Below, one piece after another: positions 55,501-64,000 of a DNA stretch of 64,000 nucleotides; the stretch's first letter is position 1; every line of letters starts with the position of its first letter. Source of the DNA: Botryllus schlosseri. Lineage: Eukaryota. The position numbers and the translations under genes are program-made. The DNA lies in NCBI GenBank assembly GCA_051294905.1, contig CM119375.1, forward strand, positions 3,782,001-3,846,000, given 5' to 3'. The notes under the pieces are model-generated. The model ran no database searches and had not been told where the DNA came from. It worked only from the letters and a program-made list of their open reading frames with translations.

Positions 55501-58500
55501 TAGTACAGACCTGGGCAAAGTGCGGCCCGCGAAGCTATTCCGTGCGGCCCGTGAAAGGTTGCTTGGAATTTAAAACTTAAAACTTGCTTTTTGAATGACT
55601 AAAACCATAGGCTGTATCAAATGAACAGGAAATTCGTTTACTTTGAAGCCCGTTCATTAATATGCCACGATTTCGCTGCCTTCGTACCTGACATGCGTAA
55701 TCTAGATTTAAAATAAAGGCAATGTGGCAAAGTATGAGAAGCAATTGAAATCACAAAAAATCACTTTTCCATATAGTTTAGAGCAAACCTTATTTGTTGC
55801 CATTGTCACGTTACGCATTATGCGGTATGTGTTTCAATTTGTTACGTGATATGTTTCCAAATACCAATTCGTAATACAAGTCAATCTGAACTCGCGATAA
55901 TTATATGACTCATCATATCTATTACCCATAAAGGATAGCCTACCATGCCGAAAACTGAAATTCAAAGAAGGTATAGGTTTAGAATTTAGAGCACGAAATA
56001 TTCGTATACTGGAGTCTGGGGTGAACCAGTCCTTTCAGTTTTTGCCGAGCATGTCGCCGAGATTAAGGATTTTAATTAAAGTCGGTCTTATTACAAAAAC
56101 ACGGAACACTCGGACAAGGGAGGGCGAAGTTCAGAAAAACTGCAAGCTTCGCTAAACGTAAAGGGTATTTAAGCTGTACACTGCTCGGAAGGCAGCACAG
56201 CCAAGAAAATAAGCTTTGTACTATTGCATATACATTTCAGTGCAATGGTTCTCGAACTGAAAGCATCAGAACGGTGGCGCGAAGCCGAAGTTCATTGAAA
56301 AAAATTTTCGCGCTAGGCGCGATATACCCCCGGCTTATAGATGCTGCTCTGTGTATTGTCCTACTTTTATATTTCACAATTCTCTCATCAACAGCCAAAA
56401 TAGTCCATGCCATCAAACTATCCGTTGGTTGCACTTTTTAATATTTTGAGATATCATGATAAGGGGACGCGAAATTGTTCACTATTGTTAAGGGAGGCGT
56501 GCCTAACAAAGTTTGAGAACCACTGCTTTAGATTCTTAATAGAGGAACATGGATAGGTGTTCAAAGAGAACTAAGATTTATCATGTTTAACATTGTTTCC
56601 AAGCATGACAGCAAATAGCTATTTTTTTTAATTAACCGTCACTTTCTCATTACCTAATATCAACACATTCACTGAACAGCATTTATTAACTATGCAATTT
56701 GCAAATAAAATTAAAACACGCTGGAGAATATAACTAAAATTTTTCACTCGGCCCGCCAACGTATATATTTTTCTCATTTGGCCCGCGGAGGAAAATAATT
56801 GCCCACCCCTGGAGTAGTGTGACTAGAAAAATTTAACCTTCCCAGTTTATATTAGAACTAGAATGAAGTATATAATTAGATAACCAGCATTTCGCTCTAA
56901 TTAGTCTAATCACACAATTCGAATTATCTAATTATCTAGTTGTCCAGGTCCAATCTACAGGCCCACTGCATATTCCAGACTCCTGACTACATCGACATCT
57001 CTACATACCTTCTCTCCTGCGGTGTATTTTGAGGCTATCAATTTCTTCGTAAAATTTGGAGCTTCAACTTTGTCTTCTGAGGCATTATTTTTAAAGTAAA
57101 ATGAAGTATCGAAAAAACACAAAAAGCCACGCGTTAGTGATTACCGAAATTGATTTCGCTAAAAAGCATGCAGCCGAGCAAAGTAACGGTGACGGAAACA
57201 TACAGCAACTTAAGATGATCAGTGCGTGATTAAAAAGTGATGTATCCACTTCAGCGCGGAAGAAGGTAACGTGACTCGTGAAATGAAAGGAAATAAATAC
57301 GTTCACGATCATACAGGATACAAGAAATGGGTGAAGTGATACACCGCGACATGCATTGTTGAATATCTATTCTTTCTACTCCACTAAACTCGAGCCTCAC
57401 CGTAGCTCGGAGGGTGATTGAAATTGGAAAACCCCAGAATTTGCTCTACTCCCAATCTTGACAAGCTGAATGAAAGCAAAGCGGCTAGAAATGTGCACAA
57501 GATGAAATGCAATGCCATATCGCATAGACATTGCGACGCGTTAGTCTGCACGTTCAGCACAGCTGATGGTGAACAATACGAGGGTGATAATGAGAAGCGG
57601 TGATTAGCTCATTGGAATAGCTATCACGTTAAGTTTATTTTTTCTTATCTTTGCAACTGTGGCACAGAAAAATTCGCGCTTGAAGCTCACATTAACGCAG
57701 TATGCTGGGATCCACATTACGAGATATGTGGTTTTGTTATCCTTAGGCTACTGAATTGCAAGTAACGTCGACTAAAGCTGTTGCAAATATAGTGCTAATA
57801 CTCTTACAGACGGATTATCCCTACATCAAGGCAGGACCGTAGTTCCCAATCTACCATTAGCAAAGCCCTGTAATTGTTCCATACCTATTTCTAAGATATT
57901 AACTTGCGCGCTGATGCCTAATAAAATAATGCTAATAAAGCATTTGACTGCGTTTCATAATTAATAACCGTGTTGTGCTACTTCACATTTCCCGACGCTT
58001 TCGACGTGACAAACATACATGCAAAATTGCCCGACTTACACCTACGTTATAGTGTCCTATACACCACTCGTTACATTGCTAGATATCGTGTAAACAGCCG
58101 GAAAAGACTTCCTGCTCTGAGTGTCTAAAATATCAACTAAACCAGTGCAAGTGCCGCCATAGCATCGACATGTTCGTGGCATTCCAAAGGTCGTGCTTGT
58201 GAACCGCACCTTCGCCAGTTTCATAGTCATTCTTTTCACCCAGGTCTTTAGAATTAACCGCCTTATTCTTCCTCGATATCTCCAGCGTTTGTGACATTTG
58301 ATCCTTATAAGTCCGACGTTGATATGATTCAAATGAAGTAGGCTCGTGTCCTGGCGGCCTGGCCACGTCTGGCCTTACGATCAGTTTGGCCGTGCACTTG
58401 ACACTGCCGTAGATATTTTCGGCAATACACGAGTACACACCGCTATGCTGTCGATAGGCATCACTGATTAGCAGACAGCCTGCTTCATCATCATCAATGA

Positions 58501-61500
58501 TGCCTATGTTTGGAGTTTCAACGCTCCTTGTTATCTCAATACCGTTTCTCTGCCACGTTATGGCGGTCGGGTTAGTAGTTTCGATGATGTAAACAAAGTA
58601 CGCGGTTTCTCCTTCAGTGATAAAGCAATCGCATACTGGTTTCATGAATCTGGGTGGCGCTGCGTGTTCCGGAGCTTGGCTGGATTTGGTAACTACAGTT
58701 TGCGTTTCGTTAGATACTTTATGCCTGATTTCTGATTCCTTGCGCAATTGCTCCCTGATATCCATCTCTTCTCTTATCAGTCGACGAACTTCTTCCGTCC
58801 AGTCGTATTCCTTGCCTACGACTACATGTTTCAGGCTGATTGTGGACGACGCTTCGCTGCATACGTCACTGCTGTCGCTGCCGCCAATAGGGTACTCTCG
58901 AAGAAGGTTATCTTCGCTGAAGTGCACAAACTTTTGGTTGTGATGTCTGTTTGAAGATGATGCATACGTAGCTGAATTTATATGACCAACATTGCCACCG
59001 TGTTGCTGAATTTGGACGGTGTCCATTGAATCAATCTCATCGCTGTCCAACATCATCAACGGGATGGTTTTGATTGAAGTTTTACTATTTCTATTCCCCT
59101 CGTGCGTGTGATGTAGCGGTGGGGAATAGCAGCCACCTTTTGTGGTCATAGTGGGGTGAGAAAGAAGGACATCTTTTCCATAACTTGTCGGAACGCTGGT
59201 TACCGTGTTCATACTTTCGAGTAGCGACAAGCCGGCGGAGAGCATGGTAAGGCTTGTAGCTGTCTTCTGCTCCATCTTTCGGAGATAACCTGAGACAGTT
59301 GTATTACGTCAACGAAAACCACAAATCCTTCAACCGAAAAGCGGAATTCACATGTAAAGGAAATAGAATAGACACTCGGCGGTTAATAATGAGTAAACCC
59401 AGTACATCTCAAACATACACGCCATTACTTACGCCTATATTGCTAGATCGAAATAAGCAGTACATAAGTATTAACGCCTTCGTGACACAGAACGTGTACA
59501 TATTTTATTCATTGTTCCCGCCAACCTAATGCATCGTCGAACAAGTCCGGCATATTTACGCGCATGTAAACGCTCGTTCTCGGTGCTGCAATTTTTATCT
59601 TGGAGTTACATAGGCCTACTCTTTAGACCAGCGTTTGTCAAGATATCTTGTCAAGTTTCATCTTCACCACCTGCGCCAATCACGCGAAGGCGCATAATTT
59701 TCGTAGCAACCCCGGCAGAGCTCCAAGCTTTACAGATGTACACTCCCTCATCACTAGCGATAATTTCGTCGATTCGCAACACGCAACGTATATCTAAATC
59801 TGACGGGAAGAGCGATGACTTGGAACAGTCGAAAGGAATCTTCCACGATGACGGCAAATCATTCTCCTCAGTTGGCAAATGCTGATGGCTGATTCTTCCG
59901 AATATTTCCAATAAAACCCCGTCCTTGTACCAAGCAATTTTGGCAGGCGGATGGGATATCACGCTGCATTTTAGCGTGGCAGTTTTTCCTTCGCGTGCCG
60001 TTACCTCGTCCTTCTTCGAGCCTATAAATTTAGGGGGAATTATTACTTGGAAGGTAGGGGGTGTGCAATAACCTCCACTGTGGCTTATAGTTTGCTTGCT
60101 GTCGGAAGAGTAATCTTTCGAGCCTGTTGTGTCGTAGGCAGTAGTAGTTCTGCTTGAGTCGCAATCAGAAAAAGAGTCATGCGAGCAGCATCCAACAGGA
60201 GTCGCAAAATTAATGTCGCCATCTGGAGTATTAAATTCTAAATCGGACAGCAACGCACCGGATGAGCAAGACAAATATTCGATTGTGACGTCAGATATAG
60301 TAATCATTGATTCGTCGTCAAATGTATCGTTTCCATCGAGATAGCTCGTAGAATTTGAACTATTCTCTATATCAGTATCTTTACGTTCAAATATGCACGT
60401 ATCGTTGCAGTAGTCCGTGTCTAAAATGATAGCTTTTTTCTCGTCGACCGCGTGATCTGAACCGTCGCTAGCATCATCAAACGGTGTACCGGTAGAAGAC
60501 TCTAAAGAATACTGCCGATGGATTATTTTCAAGCTTGCGCCCACACTGTCGCACCTAGCCGGATGCGAACGTGGTTGATTTGCGGAGAGAGGTAAAATTC
60601 CTATATCCATTCCTAATCTCTCCGACAATTTCGAAGTGACACAGTCGCTATCGCTAAAAGACGAGTTTCTAGTCAAATGCCTGGTCTCGGTACTGGAAAA
60701 ATATTCAGACTCAAGGCTCGAGTTTCGGCTAATGGTTCCACGTTTGAATACCAAAGGTCTGCCCAAACTTTGTCTGTGCGTTATTTCGTCGTCCTCGCTC
60801 TTTTTCGGGGTGCCTCGAACGCCTTCCATTTCGCCCATCATGATGGCTTTTTCCAGAGCTTCAAACGATGCCAATGAATCCGCAGAGTCGACGGCATCAG
60901 AATCATTGCTTCGCAAAATTCTTATGTTCAATGGATTAGGGTCCATACTAGCTTGAATTGTGGTTGAACTTTCATACTCAAATTCATCAACTTCCAAAAT
61001 TGGTGATAATTCTTTGGGAGTAGGGGTCTCAAAGCGGTCTTCAAACTCGCAGGGCGACTCGGCACTTACAACAGGCAGTTCCATTGGTTGTGTGGGATCT
61101 TCGTCCGACAGCTGCCTATCCTCTAAAATAGAAGGTAACATCTGATCATTAGAACTCGCTTCGCTTAGGCATGATTTAGTCTCGTTTTGAGAAGCTGGTG
61201 TAATATTGTCGTATTTGAGTTTTAACTGCTCTCTTGGTATTTGTTGATTGCAAATTTGTCCTTCATCTACAGATTTGGATGTGATAGCCCCAGTTGAAAT
61301 AAGGTGATCTGTGGTGCCGATAAGGAGTGACTCTTGCATATTTTTCTTGTTCTCAACGACTGGGTGCGGTGTCGGAGATAGACAAACGTCTTCAGCTATA
61401 TCACGCAATTCGCAACCGTCTGTGGAGTCACAATCATCACTTAGTTCTACGCTAATTGATTTTGTGATCGCATTATTCAGAGCGGCACTGTAATTTGATC

Positions 61501-64000
61501 TTTCGTTGCCGATAAAAGATGCCTCTTCGAATTCAGAAAATGTCCTGGGATAGTCTGTTGGTAGATATTCGTCGTCCGCTGTGTCACAATCGAAAGTACC
61601 GGTGGTAAAGCTGGCAAAAGGTGATCCGACAGTATCTCCGGGTGACCAAGCTCTGGAACTGGGGTTTGGCGATACCGTAATATGTTCATTTCTAGCGTCG
61701 GCGGTGTTTTCGTTGGAATGTACGCTATTCGTCAACTCATCGGGCACAGGAGTGTTACTGAGTGTGCGATTCGGGTCGGGCCGTGGCATTAAGTCACTGG
61801 TAGGTCGTGGGTGATCAACCGATGCGTAGTCCAATCCACTGTAATTATTTTGTAGGATAGCAGTAGCACGATTAACTCCCAGAATTGCCTCCAAATTGCT
61901 TAATGTTGAGTTTACCTCTGTGCAAAGAGTAAGAGCATCAGCCAAGGCTTCATGACATGAAATAACACCAGAGAGGTCGCGTTTCTCTGACACAGCTTCA
62001 TTTCCTTTCTCCCCTATGTGTTCTGTGTGCTCTCTATTCAATCTCACCACCGAACTCTCAAGCTCACATTCAGCGATACCGGTCTCCGTATTCGGTTGTT
62101 TTACAAATAAAACAGATTCCTTACTGGTATGTTTTGAATTGGTTTCAGATGCCGTGATATCGATTTCAGTGGGATCGACAATGTCCGAGGCCTCCAGGCC
62201 ACCCGCATTCGATATCCATTGCTTGTATCCAAGAACTTGGTCAAATTCGAAAGACGTGATAGATTTCTCTCGATCCGTTGCCTTTGACGGATGACCTAGA
62301 TCGATTTGCTGGTGTTCAGATGAATATGTGGAGGAGATCATGTCGTCAAATGTCGGAATGGATCCTTTGTCGATACGGTTTTCTGGGTTGGGGATTATTT
62401 TGGACGATTTGCCTGAATCGGCATTGTCCTTCTCATGAGCAATCGAACGGACCCCACATATCTCCCCATAGTCGGGATCAGGTAAAGGGTAGGAAAATGA
62501 CGGAAATGACGATAAGATACCCGTATCTGAACCTTCGCCATCACTTTTCCTTGACCAGGTAGATAGCTCATCATCGATGGAAATACTTCCGGCAAAAATA
62601 TCGTATGCAGTAACATGAGCGAACATAAGTGGCGCCTGTTGAACGGGGGTCAACCTATGCAGAATATATTCTGGAAGCCTGAATGGTTTTTCAATACCGT
62701 CCATTTCACACCAGCTAGCTCTTGACGCATAATCGTAACTCCTTGGTAATGACGCAGATCTGGTTACACTTTTCAAACTAGATCGTTCATTAGTTAAACT
62801 ACGACCGTCGACGCTTGACGCGCGCCTTGTAAGCCTATGATTTGGACCTTTCGAAAGGCATGGATTCCCGGACAGAACTATACTTGCGTGGGATTGATAT
62901 AACGTCCGCATCGCGGGTTTGTCTTCACGTGTCCTGGAGCGGCCTTGACGCTGCGTAAGACTAGTTGTTTTATCTTCGGGGGATATTCTAGATATCTTGC
63001 TGCTACTAGGTGTATCAACGTTATTATTTACTCTACAGCGCTCAATGCGTTCGCAGTCATTAGCAGATGTCGCTTTCGTTGTCGATTCCAACAGTTTGCG
63101 GTTTATACGCAGAGCTGGCCTTTTGCGCTGGCGGTTCGTGAACTGTGGATTACGTACCTGGCCTGTAAATGAAAAAGCTTTATAAATCTCCCTGAATTCC
63201 GTGGCTGATATCTTTACCTCACTTAGTGCAGCAACATTCCACCGTGCGTCACTCAACAAACTCATGCACGGCATACTGCAAATGCGATGTTAGTTTTTAT
63301 ATTTAAAAAAAAACGACACACATACACACACATGTCATGTGCTGAACCCAAGCTGAAAACTTTGATCTTAAACGTCGTCCCTTTATACTTCCACGATTTC
63401 AGGCTCAAATTGTCGAAGGCACTCACGTAATAGACATTCCTTCTCTTTACACTTACAGAGCTACATTCAATTCCAAACATGTATTTTTTCCAATAAGTAG
63501 GATTCAAACGGTAGCCTACCGTCAACCAGAACTTTGTATGCCATGACAGGCTGTATGGCTTCATGGATTTATTAGGGATTAGGACAATAAAGTGTATGTA
63601 AAGTGTAATATACGGAAATATCAAAGACATAAAGTATAGGAGTAACAAGATGCAAAAAATTGTATGGATCGTTATTCAACCTCATGCTTTTTCAAAACGC
63701 GTGACAAAATGAGAGAAAATTCGTGCAGAACAATACAAAATATCGATATTTCGCGAACTTGATCGCAATCATACATAATATACAAATGAAAACGAAGCAA
63801 AACAATCAATGTAGTTGAACATTGACTTCACTCATGCAATGCAGTGTTGTGTCAAAAATACAAACATCGCTCACATCTCACCTTCGCAAGGCAGTACCGT
63901 GACTTTGGAAGTGCTAGACGCGTCGCCGGCAATATTTAACGCAGAAAATGTATACACCCCCGAATCGGCCGCGGTGGGACTTTTAATTGTCATGGAGAAC
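1..64000 (-). CDS. TTN: Titin/connectin orthologue, multi-exon, partial (I-band through I/A junction to start of A-band D-zone)
   Basis: Dozens of minus-strand exons encoding I-set Ig (W..G..L / D.G.Y.C) and Fn3 (PP..DGGS.I..Y / Y.FRV.AEN..G) domains joined by phase-consistent GT-AG introns; N2A motif and I/A domain pattern match vertebrate titin. Confidence 0.95.
2416..2701. mobile_element. Palindromic MITE-like element (family A), full hairpin copy
   Basis: About 110-bp arm 2421-2531 is a near-perfect reverse complement of 2586-2696. Confidence 0.85.
2750..3329 (+). mobile_element. hAT-type non-autonomous element with internal GACTCGA(GT) repeats, copy 1
   Basis: Ends CAGGGTTGTAA...TTACAACCCTG; perfect 8-bp TSD CTGGAAAT (2742-2749 / 3330-3337). 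Confidence 0.9.
7656..20290 (-). CDS. TTN: I/A junction: Ig-Fn3-Fn3-Fn3-Ig-Fn3-Fn3-Ig-Fn3x6 (14 domains)
   Basis: Exons 19023-19188, 18781-18965, 18374-18488, 18175-18316, 16272-16438, 15662-15973, 14872-15165, 14362-14513, 14047-14296, 13791-13988, 13111-13310, 12904-13018, 12192-12394, 11628-11932, 10914-11028, 10645-10850, 9859-10096, 9150-9285, 8904-9091, 8683-8797, 7656-7958. Confidence 0.9.
10321..10545. mobile_element. Family A copy (diverged)
   Basis: aatatattcatattgaaatgaaccggaatat...ctgacactcgtca...gcaactagtagagaatt matches the 2421 arm. Confidence 0.75.
12023..12150. mobile_element. Family A half copy
   Basis: caattgaataatatattcatattgaaat...tcaggagtaat...aactagta...atatgacgtcac. 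Confidence 0.7.
13351..13580. mobile_element. Family A copy (decayed)
   Basis: gaatagtatattcatattgaaat start; tagttgctga reverse-arm remnant. Confidence 0.55.
15381..15560. repeat. Intronic tandem duplication of an about 80-bp unit, preceded by (AAATT)n
   Basis: gatatt.atgtattaga...gcaactagg...ttcata.agcattttaaa occurs twice. Confidence 0.55.
16480..16690. mobile_element. Family A copy
   Basis: ctcttggaggta..gaactt...caattgaataatatattgatattgaaat...ggcactcgacagg...gtcaacaatcg. Confidence 0.65.
17165..18037. mobile_element. TIR DNA element (CAGGGCCGTA...TACGGTCCTG), non-autonomous
   Basis: Short imperfect TIRs; flanks tagtggggaa / tggtggggaa (9 of 10 identical). Confidence 0.6.
19660..19880. 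mobile_element. Family A copy
   Basis: aatattttcagctgacactcgtc...aactagtaaagaatt...gaggcgaacagat. Confidence 0.7.
20290..34438 (-). CDS. TTN: Distal tandem Ig segment, about 18 Ig domains (exons incl. 34328-34438, 33909-34066, 33475-33716, 33294-33417, 32400-32665, 30984-31152, 30535-30682, 29330-29715, 28374-28643, 27751-27864, 27539-27691, 27237-27378, 27051-27175, 26608-26807, 26391-26548, 26054-26238, 24742-25005, 24460-24682, 23634-23968, 22979-23334, 22378-22509, 21645-21905, 20168-20617)
   Basis: Repeated F.K.L.D..V.E...A.FECE / W.K.G / R.L.I / D...Y.C motifs; splice phases checked. Confidence 0.9.
21058..21565. mobile_element. TTAA-flanked hairpin MITE, Kolobok-like (AGGG...CCCT ends)
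   Basis: TTAA at 21054-21057 and 21566-21569; about 190-bp inverted arms (21058-21247 vs 21375-21565). Confidence 0.85.
22658..22770. mobile_element. Family A half copy
   Basis: cagctgacacttgtcagg...gtcagtaactag...gtatgtcaaca. Confidence 0.6.
24335..24440. mobile_element. Family A half copy
   Basis: aatatattcatactgaaataaatccgaatattttaggctgacactcatcagg. Confidence 0.7.
26925..27030. mobile_element. Family A internally deleted copy
   Basis: tagtatattcatattgaaa...tgtcagccgaatat. Confidence 0.5.
27953..28318. mobile_element. Family A, second full hairpin copy (diverged)
   Basis: Forward arm about 27953-28075; reverse arm about 28210-28318 (ctagttgctgacgat...tgtcagccgaaaatatt...tttcaatatg). 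Confidence 0.75.
29816..30014. mobile_element. hAT/Tip100-like MITE end fragment
   Basis: AGGACA-rich subterminal motifs and terminal GGTAACCCTA; no TSD found. Confidence 0.35.
30745..30860. mobile_element. Family A half copy, reverse orientation
   Basis: gttgatataca...ttcaattttctactagttg matches the reverse arm at 2586-2640. Confidence 0.6.
31381..31515 (-). mobile_element. tRNA-derived SINE (head plus body)
   Basis: Minus strand has box A TAGTGTAATGG and box B GGTTCAATCCC, followed by GGGTCAGACCAAAGACC...CCTGGCGCTCAGCATTA; no closing tRNA acceptor stem. Confidence 0.7.
31716..32225 (+). mobile_element. hAT-type GACTCGA-repeat element, copy 2
   Basis: CAGGGATGTAA...TTACAACCCTG; perfect TSD GTGAGTAG (31708-31715 / 32226-32233). 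Confidence 0.9.
32870..32980. mobile_element. Family A half copy, reverse orientation
   Basis: aaaatatttaggtttat...tactattcaattgcatattgaaatttgtacctc matches 2660-2725. Confidence 0.6.
34515..35227 (-). CDS. TTN: Non-Ig Ser/Thr-rich insert (exons 35104-35227 and 34515-34808; possible microexon 34895-34903)
   Basis: EDGGDATKTGTS...NLSE (phase 1-2) then YQAIAAAEIT...VLSTTTSTSVIQ...DSVTKVT (phase 2-2), joining in frame to the next Ig exon at 34438. Confidence 0.7.
35423..43371 (-). CDS. TTN: About six tandem Ig domains (exons 43093-43371, 42169-42435, 38237-38524, 37194-37324, 36995-37130, 36693-36838, 35844-36060, 35567-35760, 35423-35507)
   Basis: Ig motifs in ORFs 43031, 42143, 38202, 36897, 35803, 35549; phase-consistent splice sites. 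Confidence 0.85.
37548..38082 (+). mobile_element. hAT-type GACTCGA-repeat element, copy 3
   Basis: CAGGATTGTAA...TTACAACCCTG; perfect TSD GTTATTAG (37540-37547 / 38083-38090). Confidence 0.9.
38683..41698. mobile_element. 3.0-kb TIR DNA transposon (hAT or P superfamily), apparently without an intact transposase
   Basis: Perfect 32-bp TIR CAGGGATATATAGAACTCCGGGATGGCTGACT; perfect 8-bp TSD ATACCAAT (38675-38682 / 41699-41706). Confidence 0.9.
40806..41230. mobile_element. Inverted-repeat-bounded segment nested in the 3-kb element
   Basis: ccatgg...gg.tgcatttaaaa.aaac at 40806-40835 is mirrored at about 41190-41230. Confidence 0.45.
44000..47521 (-). CDS. TTN: Giant PEVK-analogous exon (3522 nt, 1174 codons, phase 1-1) with a 42-aa tandem repeat array
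   Basis: ORF 43809..47534; acceptor ttcttcaag before 47521; likely donor GTAGGT after 44000; K/E/S/T/P/Q/V-rich. Confidence 0.85.
44960..47090 (-). repeat. Coding tandem repeat, about 18 units of about 126 nt (consensus like VTSKSEITKTDLKEPAEPKSAQPVKVEPQVKTQASKSSAQTK)
   Basis: Units counted in the translation; recurring plus-strand motifs gatttcagattt, gacttgcttgcttgagttttaac. Confidence 0.9.
47614..50306 (-). CDS. TTN: N2A element: linker + I80-like Ig, UN2A unique sequence, I81-like Ig (exons 50163-50306, 49426-49606, 48931-49029, 48706-48868, 47915-48105, 47614-47777)
   Basis: W.KGKWR motif in the first Ig; ALKKTP...EEE...VDPKEYEKYARNYGITDYRQLL; ETVKVIKDIED...YKGNEKLSPSDK...YRIVAGPH; all closely resemble recalled vertebrate I80-UN2A-I81. 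Confidence 0.9.
50920..53512 (-). CDS. TTN: One Ig domain in two exons (53394-53512, 50920-51088)
   Basis: IAPEFVTRP...KIKGIPKPEIYWEKE joined in phase 0 to GKKLQPSGRVKTF...GDAGTYDCVAENSAG. Confidence 0.85.
51632..53151. mobile_element. 1.5-kb hAT-type non-autonomous element with (TAATTG)n subterminal arrays
   Basis: TIR CAGAGTTGGATCAATT; perfect TSD CTGTGAAA (51624-51631 / 53152-53159); gtaatt repeats at both ends. Confidence 0.9.
54938..57076 (-). CDS. TTN: One Ig domain in three small exons (57009-57076, 55223-55362, 54938-55014)
   Basis: Manual splicing gives DKVEAPNFTKKL...VRLHCQLTGSSPIQITWSKDG...SDSGEYSVMAKNKKGVATCSAYLTVE; not in the ORF track. Confidence 0.85.
55506..56811. mobile_element. 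hAT (Charlie-like) non-autonomous element
   Basis: CAGACCTGGGCAA...TTGCCCACCCCTG; CGGCCCGC subterminal motifs; TSD gattagta / gagtagtg (6 of 8, central TA). Confidence 0.75.
56243..56525. mobile_element. Small hAT MITE nested in the 55506-56811 element
   Basis: caatggttctcgaact ... agtttgagaaccactg TIR pair (14 of 17 match); TSD not conserved. Confidence 0.55.
58133..59289 (-). CDS. TTN: Exon with about 200 aa unique sequence, one Ig domain (PPRFMKPVCDC...HSGVYSCIAEN) and a tail; ends at a weak donor (58210 or 58240) or at the 58133 stop
   Basis: ORF 58133..59275; acceptor ctgtctcag before 59289 (phase 1). Confidence 0.8.
59504..59509 (-). terminator. Candidate polyadenylation signal AATAAA
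   Basis: Plus-strand TTTATT about 140 nt downstream of the 59651 stop in the direction of transcription. Confidence 0.5.
59651..63162 (-). CDS. TTN: Large unique-sequence exon (about 1170 aa, Ser/Asp/Glu-rich) ending in one Ig domain and a stop codon; candidate alternative terminal exon
   Basis: ORF 59651..63274; acceptor tttcatttacag before 63162 (phase 1, matches upstream donor); C-terminal PPKF...WYKDG...DEGVYICKA Ig; TGA ending at 59651. Confidence 0.8.
63882..64000 (-). CDS. TTN: Ig domain C-terminal half (partial exon): FSMTIKSPTAADSGVYTFSALNIAGDASSTSKVTVLPCE
   Basis: Manual translation shows DSGVY..A.N..G Ig motif; phase-1 donor GTGAGA follows 63882. Confidence 0.85.

What the first reader, a model, noticed from the sequence alone, without database searches (positions are those of the whole stretch)
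59504..63162. Candidate novex-3-like alternative terminal exon producing a short titin
Seen: a 3.5-kb exon with a long unique sequence, one Ig, an in-frame TGA only 8 codons after the Ig, only a weak donor (GTGGTG) before the stop, and AATAAA about 140 nt later. The next exon acceptor (59289) is also phase 1, so this exon can be skipped. Established: vertebrate TTN has novex-3, a large alternative last exon in the proximal I-band upstream of N2B/N2A, whose product binds obscurin. Inference: a truncated-titin system may be ancestral to, or convergent in, this lineage.
Basis: partly seen in the sequence, partly recalled or inferred. Interest (0 to 1): 0.7.

Follow-up and report, generated by a model that had tools for sequence, protein, structure and literature searches.

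The report
Alternative stop-carrying end block in sea-squirt titin
Inside a giant titin-like muscle gene, this 3.5-kb exon is the last of four exons that end in their own stop codon, a block the long transcript skips and that is conserved in other sea squirts, so it probably makes a short titin much as the vertebrate novex-3 exon does.

Summary
On the minus strand there is a 3.5-kb exon (63162-59651): about 1,040 residues of unique sequence, one I-set Ig, TGA nine residues after the Ig, and AATAAA 142 nt later. The acceptors at 63162 and 59289 are both phase 1.

The novex-3-like reading gains support and widens.
- Orthologous exons all stop 1-9 residues after the same Ig. These include a Phallusia transcript-derived protein and Ciona LOC113474550.
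- Three of four other loci have no in-frame GT donor there, and the fourth has only a poor one.
- The Ciona model lies nested, same strand, inside a gene with a 25,656-aa product.
- One contig of a public run joins a 45-nt micro-exon, about 8.2 kb upstream, directly to acceptor 59289. That removes exactly the four-exon block homologous to the Phallusia protein.

Not shown:
- use of the poly(A) site in this species (RNA reads were too few);
- joining of the block to titin's N-terminal exons;
- sequence orthology with vertebrate exon 48.

The genome is probably an ascidian's. The scan also noted this stretch in an overlapping window (s1-278790).

The parts
63883..64000 (-). 3' end of exon c of the alternative block: the end of its second Ig, with a phase-1 donor GAAG|GT after 63882. 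The exon continues beyond the window to about 64878.
   Evidence: Sequence. P0158 residues 127-465 map to 64878-63892. Translation.
59651..63162 (-). Exon d, the candidate terminal exon: phase-1 acceptor, about 1,040 aa of unique sequence, one I-set Ig with an insertion of about 30 aa, a 9-residue tail, and TGA at 59653-59651.
   Evidence: Orthologs all end 1-9 aa after this Ig.
59681..60100 (-). Terminal Ig with the preceding GY.TPP.F..IPPKF motif. This is the most conserved part of exon d.
   Evidence: 42-64% identity to P0001, P0002, P0005, P0006, P0008, P0010 and P0011, and 45% to P0158. Alignment A1. PDB matches are generic I-set only.
59662..59671 (-). Two tandem phase-1 candidate donors, GCAG|GTGGTG and GGTG|GTGAAG. 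Their use is unknown.
   Evidence: Absent from L001, L002 and L007; L003 has only C|GTTAAT.
59504..59509 (-). AATAAA candidate poly(A) signal, 142 nt after the stop, followed by CA and a TGTGT-rich stretch.
   Evidence: A canonical hexamer lies within 160 nt of the stop in 4 of 5 species loci. Use not shown.
58210..59289 (-). Exon e, the first exon after the block: phase-1 acceptor at 59289, unique sequence plus one I-set Ig. The donor near 58210 is inferred. It is used by the long transcript.
   Evidence: The X13 junction contig ends on 59292-59263. 45% identity to Styela clava 'titin-like'.

Best explanation
Exon d (63162-59651) is the last exon of a four-exon alternative 3' block inside a titin-like gene of what is probably an ascidian.

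Proposed mechanism:
- After a 45-nt phase-1/phase-1 micro-exon (window-equivalent 67587-67543), the transcript takes one of two routes.
- Route 1: it splices to exon a (66703-66430, phase-1 acceptor), then to exons b, c and d. It then terminates at the TGA right after the terminal Ig, with cleavage and polyadenylation in the roughly 360-nt gap, most likely at AATAAA 59509-59504. The block contributes about 1,650 residues: three Ig domains separated by long unique sequences.
- Route 2: it splices directly to exon e (59289) and continues into the N2A-like, repeat and A-band parts of the long protein.
- The block's product lacks the whole thick-filament part, as vertebrate novex-3 titin and insect kettin do.

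Shown:
- the anatomy and splice phases;
- conservation of the stop and the absence of donors in relatives;
- transcript or annotated proteins that end here in other ascidians;
- nesting in the Ciona giant gene;
- one bypass junction.

Inferred:
- use of the poly(A) site in this species;
- joining of the block to the titin N-terminal exons;
- any function in the sarcomere.
For: 1. Orthologous ORFs found without a length filter all end 1-9 residues after the same Ig. Their tails are unrelated and of variable length, as expected for a free C-terminus.
2. DNA of four other loci. L001, L002 and L007 have no phase-1 GT between the Ig and the stop, although the next acceptor, read in L001 and L002, is phase 1. 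L003 has only C|GTTAAT. In L002 an AATAAA overlaps the last codons.
3. P0158 is a Phallusia mammillata transcript-derived protein of 1513 aa with four Ig domains and long unique sequences. It ends one residue after this Ig. It maps colinearly to exons a, b, c and d of this genome.
4. Ciona intestinalis LOC113474550 (XP_026691854.1; 1296-aa partial version P0161) ends at the same Ig. In AP043575.1 it lies, same strand, inside a gene whose product has 25,656 aa.
5. A 53-nt contig of run X13 (depth 10.8) carries 23 letters followed by window 59292-59263. Those 23 letters match, with 2 mismatches, the 3' end of the micro-exon at G000:C5:3849546-3849568. That site lies on the minus strand, 8.2 kb upstream in the same gene, and is flanked by ag| and |gttagg. 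The reversed control pattern gave 0 hits. The junction obeys GT-AG, keeps phase 1, and removes exactly exons a-d.
6. Exon a has a phase-1 acceptor, is open from that acceptor, and has no ATG before the conserved TMTGKEFTI motif. This favours cis-splicing from titin exons.
7. The block is single-copy in the genome.
Against: - In this species two in-frame GT donors precede the stop. GTGAAG resembles donors that seem to be used elsewhere in the gene, so exon d could also be spliced on to exon e.
- No RNA evidence for a 3' end near 59490. Two bulk RNA runs gave essentially no cover. The 3'-biased single-cell run gave 16 sense reads scattered over exon d and the upstream intron, and none in 59443-59840.
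- Run X13 is of unknown type. Its contigs are otherwise colinear with the genome, introns included, so it looks like DNA or pre-mRNA. The bypass junction rests on one short contig with 2 mismatches.
- The Phallusia and Ciona models start inside the block, so a link to the titin N-terminus is not shown anywhere.
- AATAAA in an AT-rich gap is not significant alone.
Confidence: 0.62

Rival explanations
1. In this species exon d is an ordinary or cassette internal exon. It is spliced from GCAG|GT or GGTG|GT to 59289, so the block is an optional insert of the long protein. The TGA and AATAAA would then be intronic by-products.
For: - Two phase-1 donors match the phase-1 acceptor.
- GTGAAx and other non-consensus donors occur elsewhere in this gene.
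- No reads were seen at the proposed 3' UTR in the 3'-biased run.
Against: - Orthologous exons in three other loci lack any in-frame donor, and a fourth has only a poor one. All end right after the Ig.
- Phallusia and Ciona proteins stop there.
- No contig joining exon d to 59289 was listed at the acceptor where the bypass contig was seen, although some rows were not shown.
Confidence: 0.2
2. The block is a stand-alone nested gene. Its mRNA would start at exon a, from an internal promoter or by spliced-leader trans-splicing at the exon-a acceptor (common in tunicates). It would give a protein of about 1,600 aa with three Ig domains and no titin N-terminus.
For: - The Phallusia model starts with Met at the exon-a equivalent.
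- Ciona annotates it as a separate gene, LOC113474550.
- From general knowledge, ascidians trans-splice many mRNAs.
Against: - In this genome exon a is open from a phase-1 acceptor that fits the micro-exon donor. It has no ATG upstream of residues that still align with Phallusia.
- The Ciona model is flagged partial.
- No spliced-leader junction was seen.
Confidence: 0.15
3. The bypass junction is an artefact (reverse-transcriptase template switch at the shared CAGGTTA) or comes from a retrocopy in another individual. The early stops in relatives would be chance stops in introns.
For: - Seven letters are shared at both sides of the junction.
- The evidence is a single 53-nt contig.
- Stops are frequent just after phase-1 donors.
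Against: - Both ends coincide with predicted exon borders and obey GT-AG and phase.
- The removed block equals the Phallusia protein's footprint.
- Relatives lack donors, not merely have early stops.
Confidence: 0.03

Closest known systems
Vertebrate TTN novex-3 (exon 48; Nx3, about 650 kDa)
   Same: - A large alternative unit in the proximal I-band part of the gene, upstream of the N2A-like and spring regions.
- Ig domains interspersed with long unique insertion sequences.
- Its own stop codon and poly(A) signal.
- Skipped by full-length isoforms.
- The product would lack the A-band part (description of Nx3 from PMC13649281 and PMC6098106).
   Different: - Vertebrates have one exon of more than 2,000 aa with six Ig domains (I18-I23). 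Here there are four exons, about 1,650 aa and three Ig domains (four in Phallusia).
- No sequence similarity to any vertebrate protein beyond generic Ig matches was found.
- Use of the 3' end and the link to the titin N-terminus are not shown here.
- In this species in-frame donors exist before the stop.
Drosophila sallimus short isoform kettin (and C. elegans ketn-1)
   Same: A truncated Z-disc/I-band product of, or relative of, the giant titin-like gene. It ends before the thick-filament part (general knowledge; parallel drawn in PMC13649281 and PMC6098106).
   Different: Kettin is a long run of Ig domains with short linkers. There is no resemblance in sequence or domain spacing, and the lineage is different.
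Ciona intestinalis LOC113474550 and Phallusia mammillata A0A6F9DI3.. ('uncharacterized protein')
   Same: Direct orthologs of the block:
- the same terminal Ig with an insertion (44-45% identity);
- the same TMTGKEFTI and DSLASFEA motifs;
- the same C-terminal end.
   Different: They are annotated as separate, uncharacterized genes and are not linked to titin. Phallusia has one more internal Ig.

Membership tests
novex-3-type alternative terminal unit of titin | Lies inside a titin(-like) gene, on the same strand, between proximal Ig exons and the spring and A-band parts. | tested here: met
   - Ig exons upstream and a giant upstream exon.
- Ig, then Fn3/Ig super-repeat-like exons downstream to coordinate 1.
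- The Ciona ortholog is nested in a gene with a 25,656-aa product.
novex-3-type alternative terminal unit of titin | Own in-frame stop directly after the last domain, plus a poly(A) signal. | tested here: met
   - TGA at 59653-59651 and AATAAA at 59509-59504.
- The stop position is conserved in all orthologs.
- Whether the signal is actually used was not tested.
novex-3-type alternative terminal unit of titin | Skipped by the long isoform. | tested here: met
   - One junction contig runs from the micro-exon to 59289.
- The Ciona annotation agrees.
- This rests on a single contig from a run of unknown type.
novex-3-type alternative terminal unit of titin | No onward splicing from the unit (truly terminal). 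| tested here: inconclusive
   - The window has two phase-1 GT donors.
- L001, L002 and L007 have none, and L003 has one implausible donor.
- No reads were available to decide.
novex-3-type alternative terminal unit of titin | Transcripts join the titin N-terminal (Z-disc) exons to the unit. | not tested
   Only indirect evidence exists: exon a has a phase-1 acceptor that fits the micro-exon donor, and it has no upstream ATG. The known ascidian models start inside the block.
novex-3-type alternative terminal unit of titin | Sequence orthology with vertebrate exon 48 (I18-I23 and the insertion sequences). | tested here: inconclusive
   An HMMER search of 1.84 billion representatives gave specific hits only to unnamed contigs and ascidian proteins. 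All other hits were generic Ig matches of about 26-34% identity, almost all away from protein ends. No vertebrate exon-48 sequence could be obtained for a direct profile comparison.
novex-3-type alternative terminal unit of titin | C-terminal region binds obscurin. | not testable with these tools
   No test was done. The interaction is also questioned for vertebrate Nx3 I21-I23 (PMC13649281).

The most novel reading that the evidence does not exclude
The ascidian block is the true ortholog of vertebrate novex-3. A short, thick-filament-free titin made by an alternative 3' end would then have existed already in the common ancestor of tunicates and vertebrates. The 'uncharacterized' Ciona and Phallusia proteins would be its products. 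That would give a simple chordate model for the unexplained conservation of the novex-3 exon.
Probability: 0.3. Interest if true: 0.65.

Novelty: new member of a known kind. Interest (0 to 1): 0.5.

Why it matters
Novex-3 is described as conserved among vertebrates, and the reason for keeping such a large exon is called a long-standing mystery (PMC6098106). I found no paper in the held library on a tunicate counterpart. A conserved block in ascidian titin that carries its own stop and is skipped by the long transcript would have two consequences.
- It would move the origin, or show a repeated invention, of short Z/I-band titins outside vertebrates.
- It would link orphan database entries (Ciona LOC113474550 and LOC100184276-like) to titin.

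Ciona is a tractable animal in which the role of a short titin could be tested.

Tried and rejected
- Reads. Bulk RNA runs X21 and X23 gave almost nothing on the exon. Single-cell run X19 gave 16 scattered sense reads and none near the proposed 3' end. This is too sparse to decide either way. X13 behaves like DNA or pre-mRNA apart from one junction contig.
- Organism. I first assumed a lancelet from genome size. I dropped this because the named nearest relatives are all ascidians and earlier notes call the genome a sea squirt.
- Generic donor weight matrix. Many evident donors of this gene score low, so it cannot rule the two GT sites in or out.
- Vertebrate homology. Searches with length limits, the ESM Atlas and PDB gave only generic Ig matches. 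The Pfam scan of P0158 likewise shows Ig families only.
- Alternative acceptor at 63277. Rejected because it is phase 2 and does not fit the phase-1 donor at 63882.
- Exon e as the first coding exon of a separate downstream gene, using the ATG 14 nt after the acceptor. Not favoured, because that ATG is not conserved in frame in L001 and a cis junction onto this acceptor exists.
- DNA of the closest relative (P0001) could not be fetched.

Full report
**What is there**

The whole window is one titin-like gene on the minus strand. Ig exons lie at high coordinates and Fn3/Ig exons at low coordinates. The flagged exon starts at 63162. Its acceptor, tttacag|GC, is phase 1 and fits the phase-1 donor after 63882. 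The frame stays open to TGA at 59653-59651.

Pfam sees a single Ig domain near the end (I-set 2e-11) and nothing in the roughly 1,040 residues before it. The Ig carries an insertion of about 30 residues. Nine residues follow its last strand. AATAAA lies 142 nt after the stop, at 59509-59504, and is followed by CA and a TGTGT-rich stretch. The next exon starts at 59289, also phase 1.

One point was missed. Two phase-1 GT sites precede the stop: GCAG|GTGGTG and, three bases on, GGTG|GTGAAG. GTGAAx-type donors seem to be used elsewhere in this gene. A generic donor matrix does not separate true from false donors here.

**Relatives**

An HMMER search of 1.84 billion representative proteins, with no length limit, gave seven specific hits. 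Every one ends 1-8 residues after the match to this Ig. One is Ciona intestinalis XP_026691854.1, 'uncharacterized protein LOC113474550'. A later search added two more:
- a Phallusia mammillata transcript-derived protein (P0158, 1513 aa, four Ig domains separated by long unique sequences), which ends one residue after the Ig;
- a 1296-aa partial Ciona model, P0161.

The tails after the last strand are unrelated in sequence and vary in length, as expected for a free C-terminus.

At DNA level:
- L001, L002 and L007 have no phase-1 GT between the Ig and the stop, although the following acceptor, which I read in L001 and L002, is phase 1.
- L003 has only C|GTTAAT.
- Four of the five loci have AATAAA or ATTAAA within 160 nt of the stop. 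In L002 it overlaps the last codons.

In the annotated Ciona assembly the 1296-aa model lies, same strand, inside a gene whose product has 25,656 residues. That is the picture expected when a long isoform skips a unit with its own end.

**The unit is larger than the exon**

P0158 maps colinearly on this genome:

| P0158 residues | Window-equivalent coordinates | Exon |
|---|---|---|
| 11-61 | 66584-66429 | a |
| 63-122 | 65881-65702 | b |
| 127-465 | 64878-63892 | c |
| 1364-1512 | 60100-59681 | d |

Exon a (L006 2703-2430) has a phase-1 acceptor and is open from that acceptor. It has no ATG before the conserved TMTGKEFTI motif.

**A junction that bypasses the block**

In run X13 a 53-nt contig (depth 10.8) consists of 23 unplaced letters followed by window 59292-59263. 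The 23 letters are absent from the window. With 2 mismatches they match G000:C5:3849546-3849568 on the minus strand, 8.2 kb upstream in the same gene. The only other genome hit has 3 mismatches, and the reversed control gives none.

The site is the 3' end of a 45-nt exon, acag|GCC...CTGCAG|gttagg, which is phase 1 at both ends. It lies about 840 nt upstream of exon a. The junction therefore obeys GT-AG, keeps the frame, and removes exactly exons a-d.

Caveats:
- X13 is of unknown type, and its other contigs are colinear with the genome, introns included.
- The junction is a single contig.
- Seven letters (CAGGTTA) are shared at the two sides.

**Direct expression evidence in this species is poor**

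Two bulk RNA runs gave almost no cover. A 3'-biased single-cell run gave 16 sense reads scattered over exon d and the upstream intron, and none at 59443-59840. I could not test whether the poly(A) site is used, nor whether exon d is ever spliced to 59289.

**Organism**

The genome has 495.5 Mb in 219 contigs. The named nearest relatives of exons d and e are Ciona, Phallusia and Styela. The non-Ig linker of exon e looks well conserved with Styela clava 'titin-like' by eye, and the overall alignment is 45% identical. Earlier notes of this scan call the genome a sea squirt. I take it as an ascidian; this is an inference.

**Interpretation**

The most likely reading (about 0.6) is an alternative 3' block a-d whose last exon is the flagged one. 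Splicing of the micro-exon to exon a leads to the stop after the terminal Ig and to polyadenylation in the 360-nt gap. Splicing of the micro-exon to 59289 gives the long protein.

Rivals:
- a cassette use through the two GT sites in this lineage (0.2);
- a stand-alone nested gene started by an internal promoter or by trans-splicing at exon a (0.15);
- artefact and chance (0.03).

**Comparison with known systems**

The design matches vertebrate novex-3: a unit with its own stop and poly(A) signal, Ig domains interspersed with insertion sequences, skipped by full-length titin (PMC13649281, PMC6098106). It differs in exon number, size and Ig count.

No vertebrate protein gave more than generic Ig similarity, and I could not obtain an exon-48 sequence for a profile comparison. 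Orthology versus convergence is therefore open.

I found no paper in the held library on a tunicate counterpart. The block is single-copy in this genome.

Noticed in passing
L004 1542-1498 minus (= G000:C5:3849587-3849543, window-equivalent 67587-67543): A 45-nt micro-exon, phase 1 at both ends, encodes about 15 residues (..LFDSASQQDNAPTA..). It acts as the branch point between the block and the long route.
   Followed up: partly
L006 2703-2430 minus (exon a): The motif TMTGKEFTI(K/Q)RS.V..L.G.NYI..S..DPSL.DTPIL is about 60% identical between this genome and Phallusia P0158. That is unusually conserved for a non-domain stretch. Its function is unknown.
   Followed up: partly
window about 60900-61000 minus (unique part of exon d) and the middle of P0158: The short motif DSLASFEA(L/H)EK is shared by this exon and the Phallusia protein inside otherwise diverged unique sequence.
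   Followed up: no
window 59700-59900 minus: The terminal Ig has an insertion of 30-40 residues between its two halves. The insertion is present in all orthologs but its sequence varies, and Pfam I-set therefore matches the Ig in two pieces.
   Followed up: no
window 59275-59273 minus: An in-frame ATG lies 14 nt after the exon-e acceptor. In a tunicate this could serve a trans-spliced downstream start, but it is not conserved in frame in L001.
   Followed up: partly
window about 59170-59120 minus (exon e): The motif DVLLSHPTMTTKGG.SPP is 89% identical to the start of the Styela clava 'titin-like' model P0163.
   Followed up: no
window 63423-64000: Bulk RNA run X21 laid 41 reads here only. Most fit only in part and had loose ends at 63651 and 63946, some running into adapter sequence. 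They may come from a repeat or another locus.
   Followed up: no
window 59751-60054: Run X13 has no contig over the first half of the terminal Ig, and nine unplaced letters sit at 60055. This may be a divergent allele or an indel in that sample.
   Followed up: no
L006 5139-9974 minus: A giant open exon of more than 1,600 aa lies upstream of the micro-exon. It contains repeated units of about 330 aa carrying the motif KKT.RKWNAKKRCFEEIPVDD. Other readers of this scan have already noted it.
   Followed up: no
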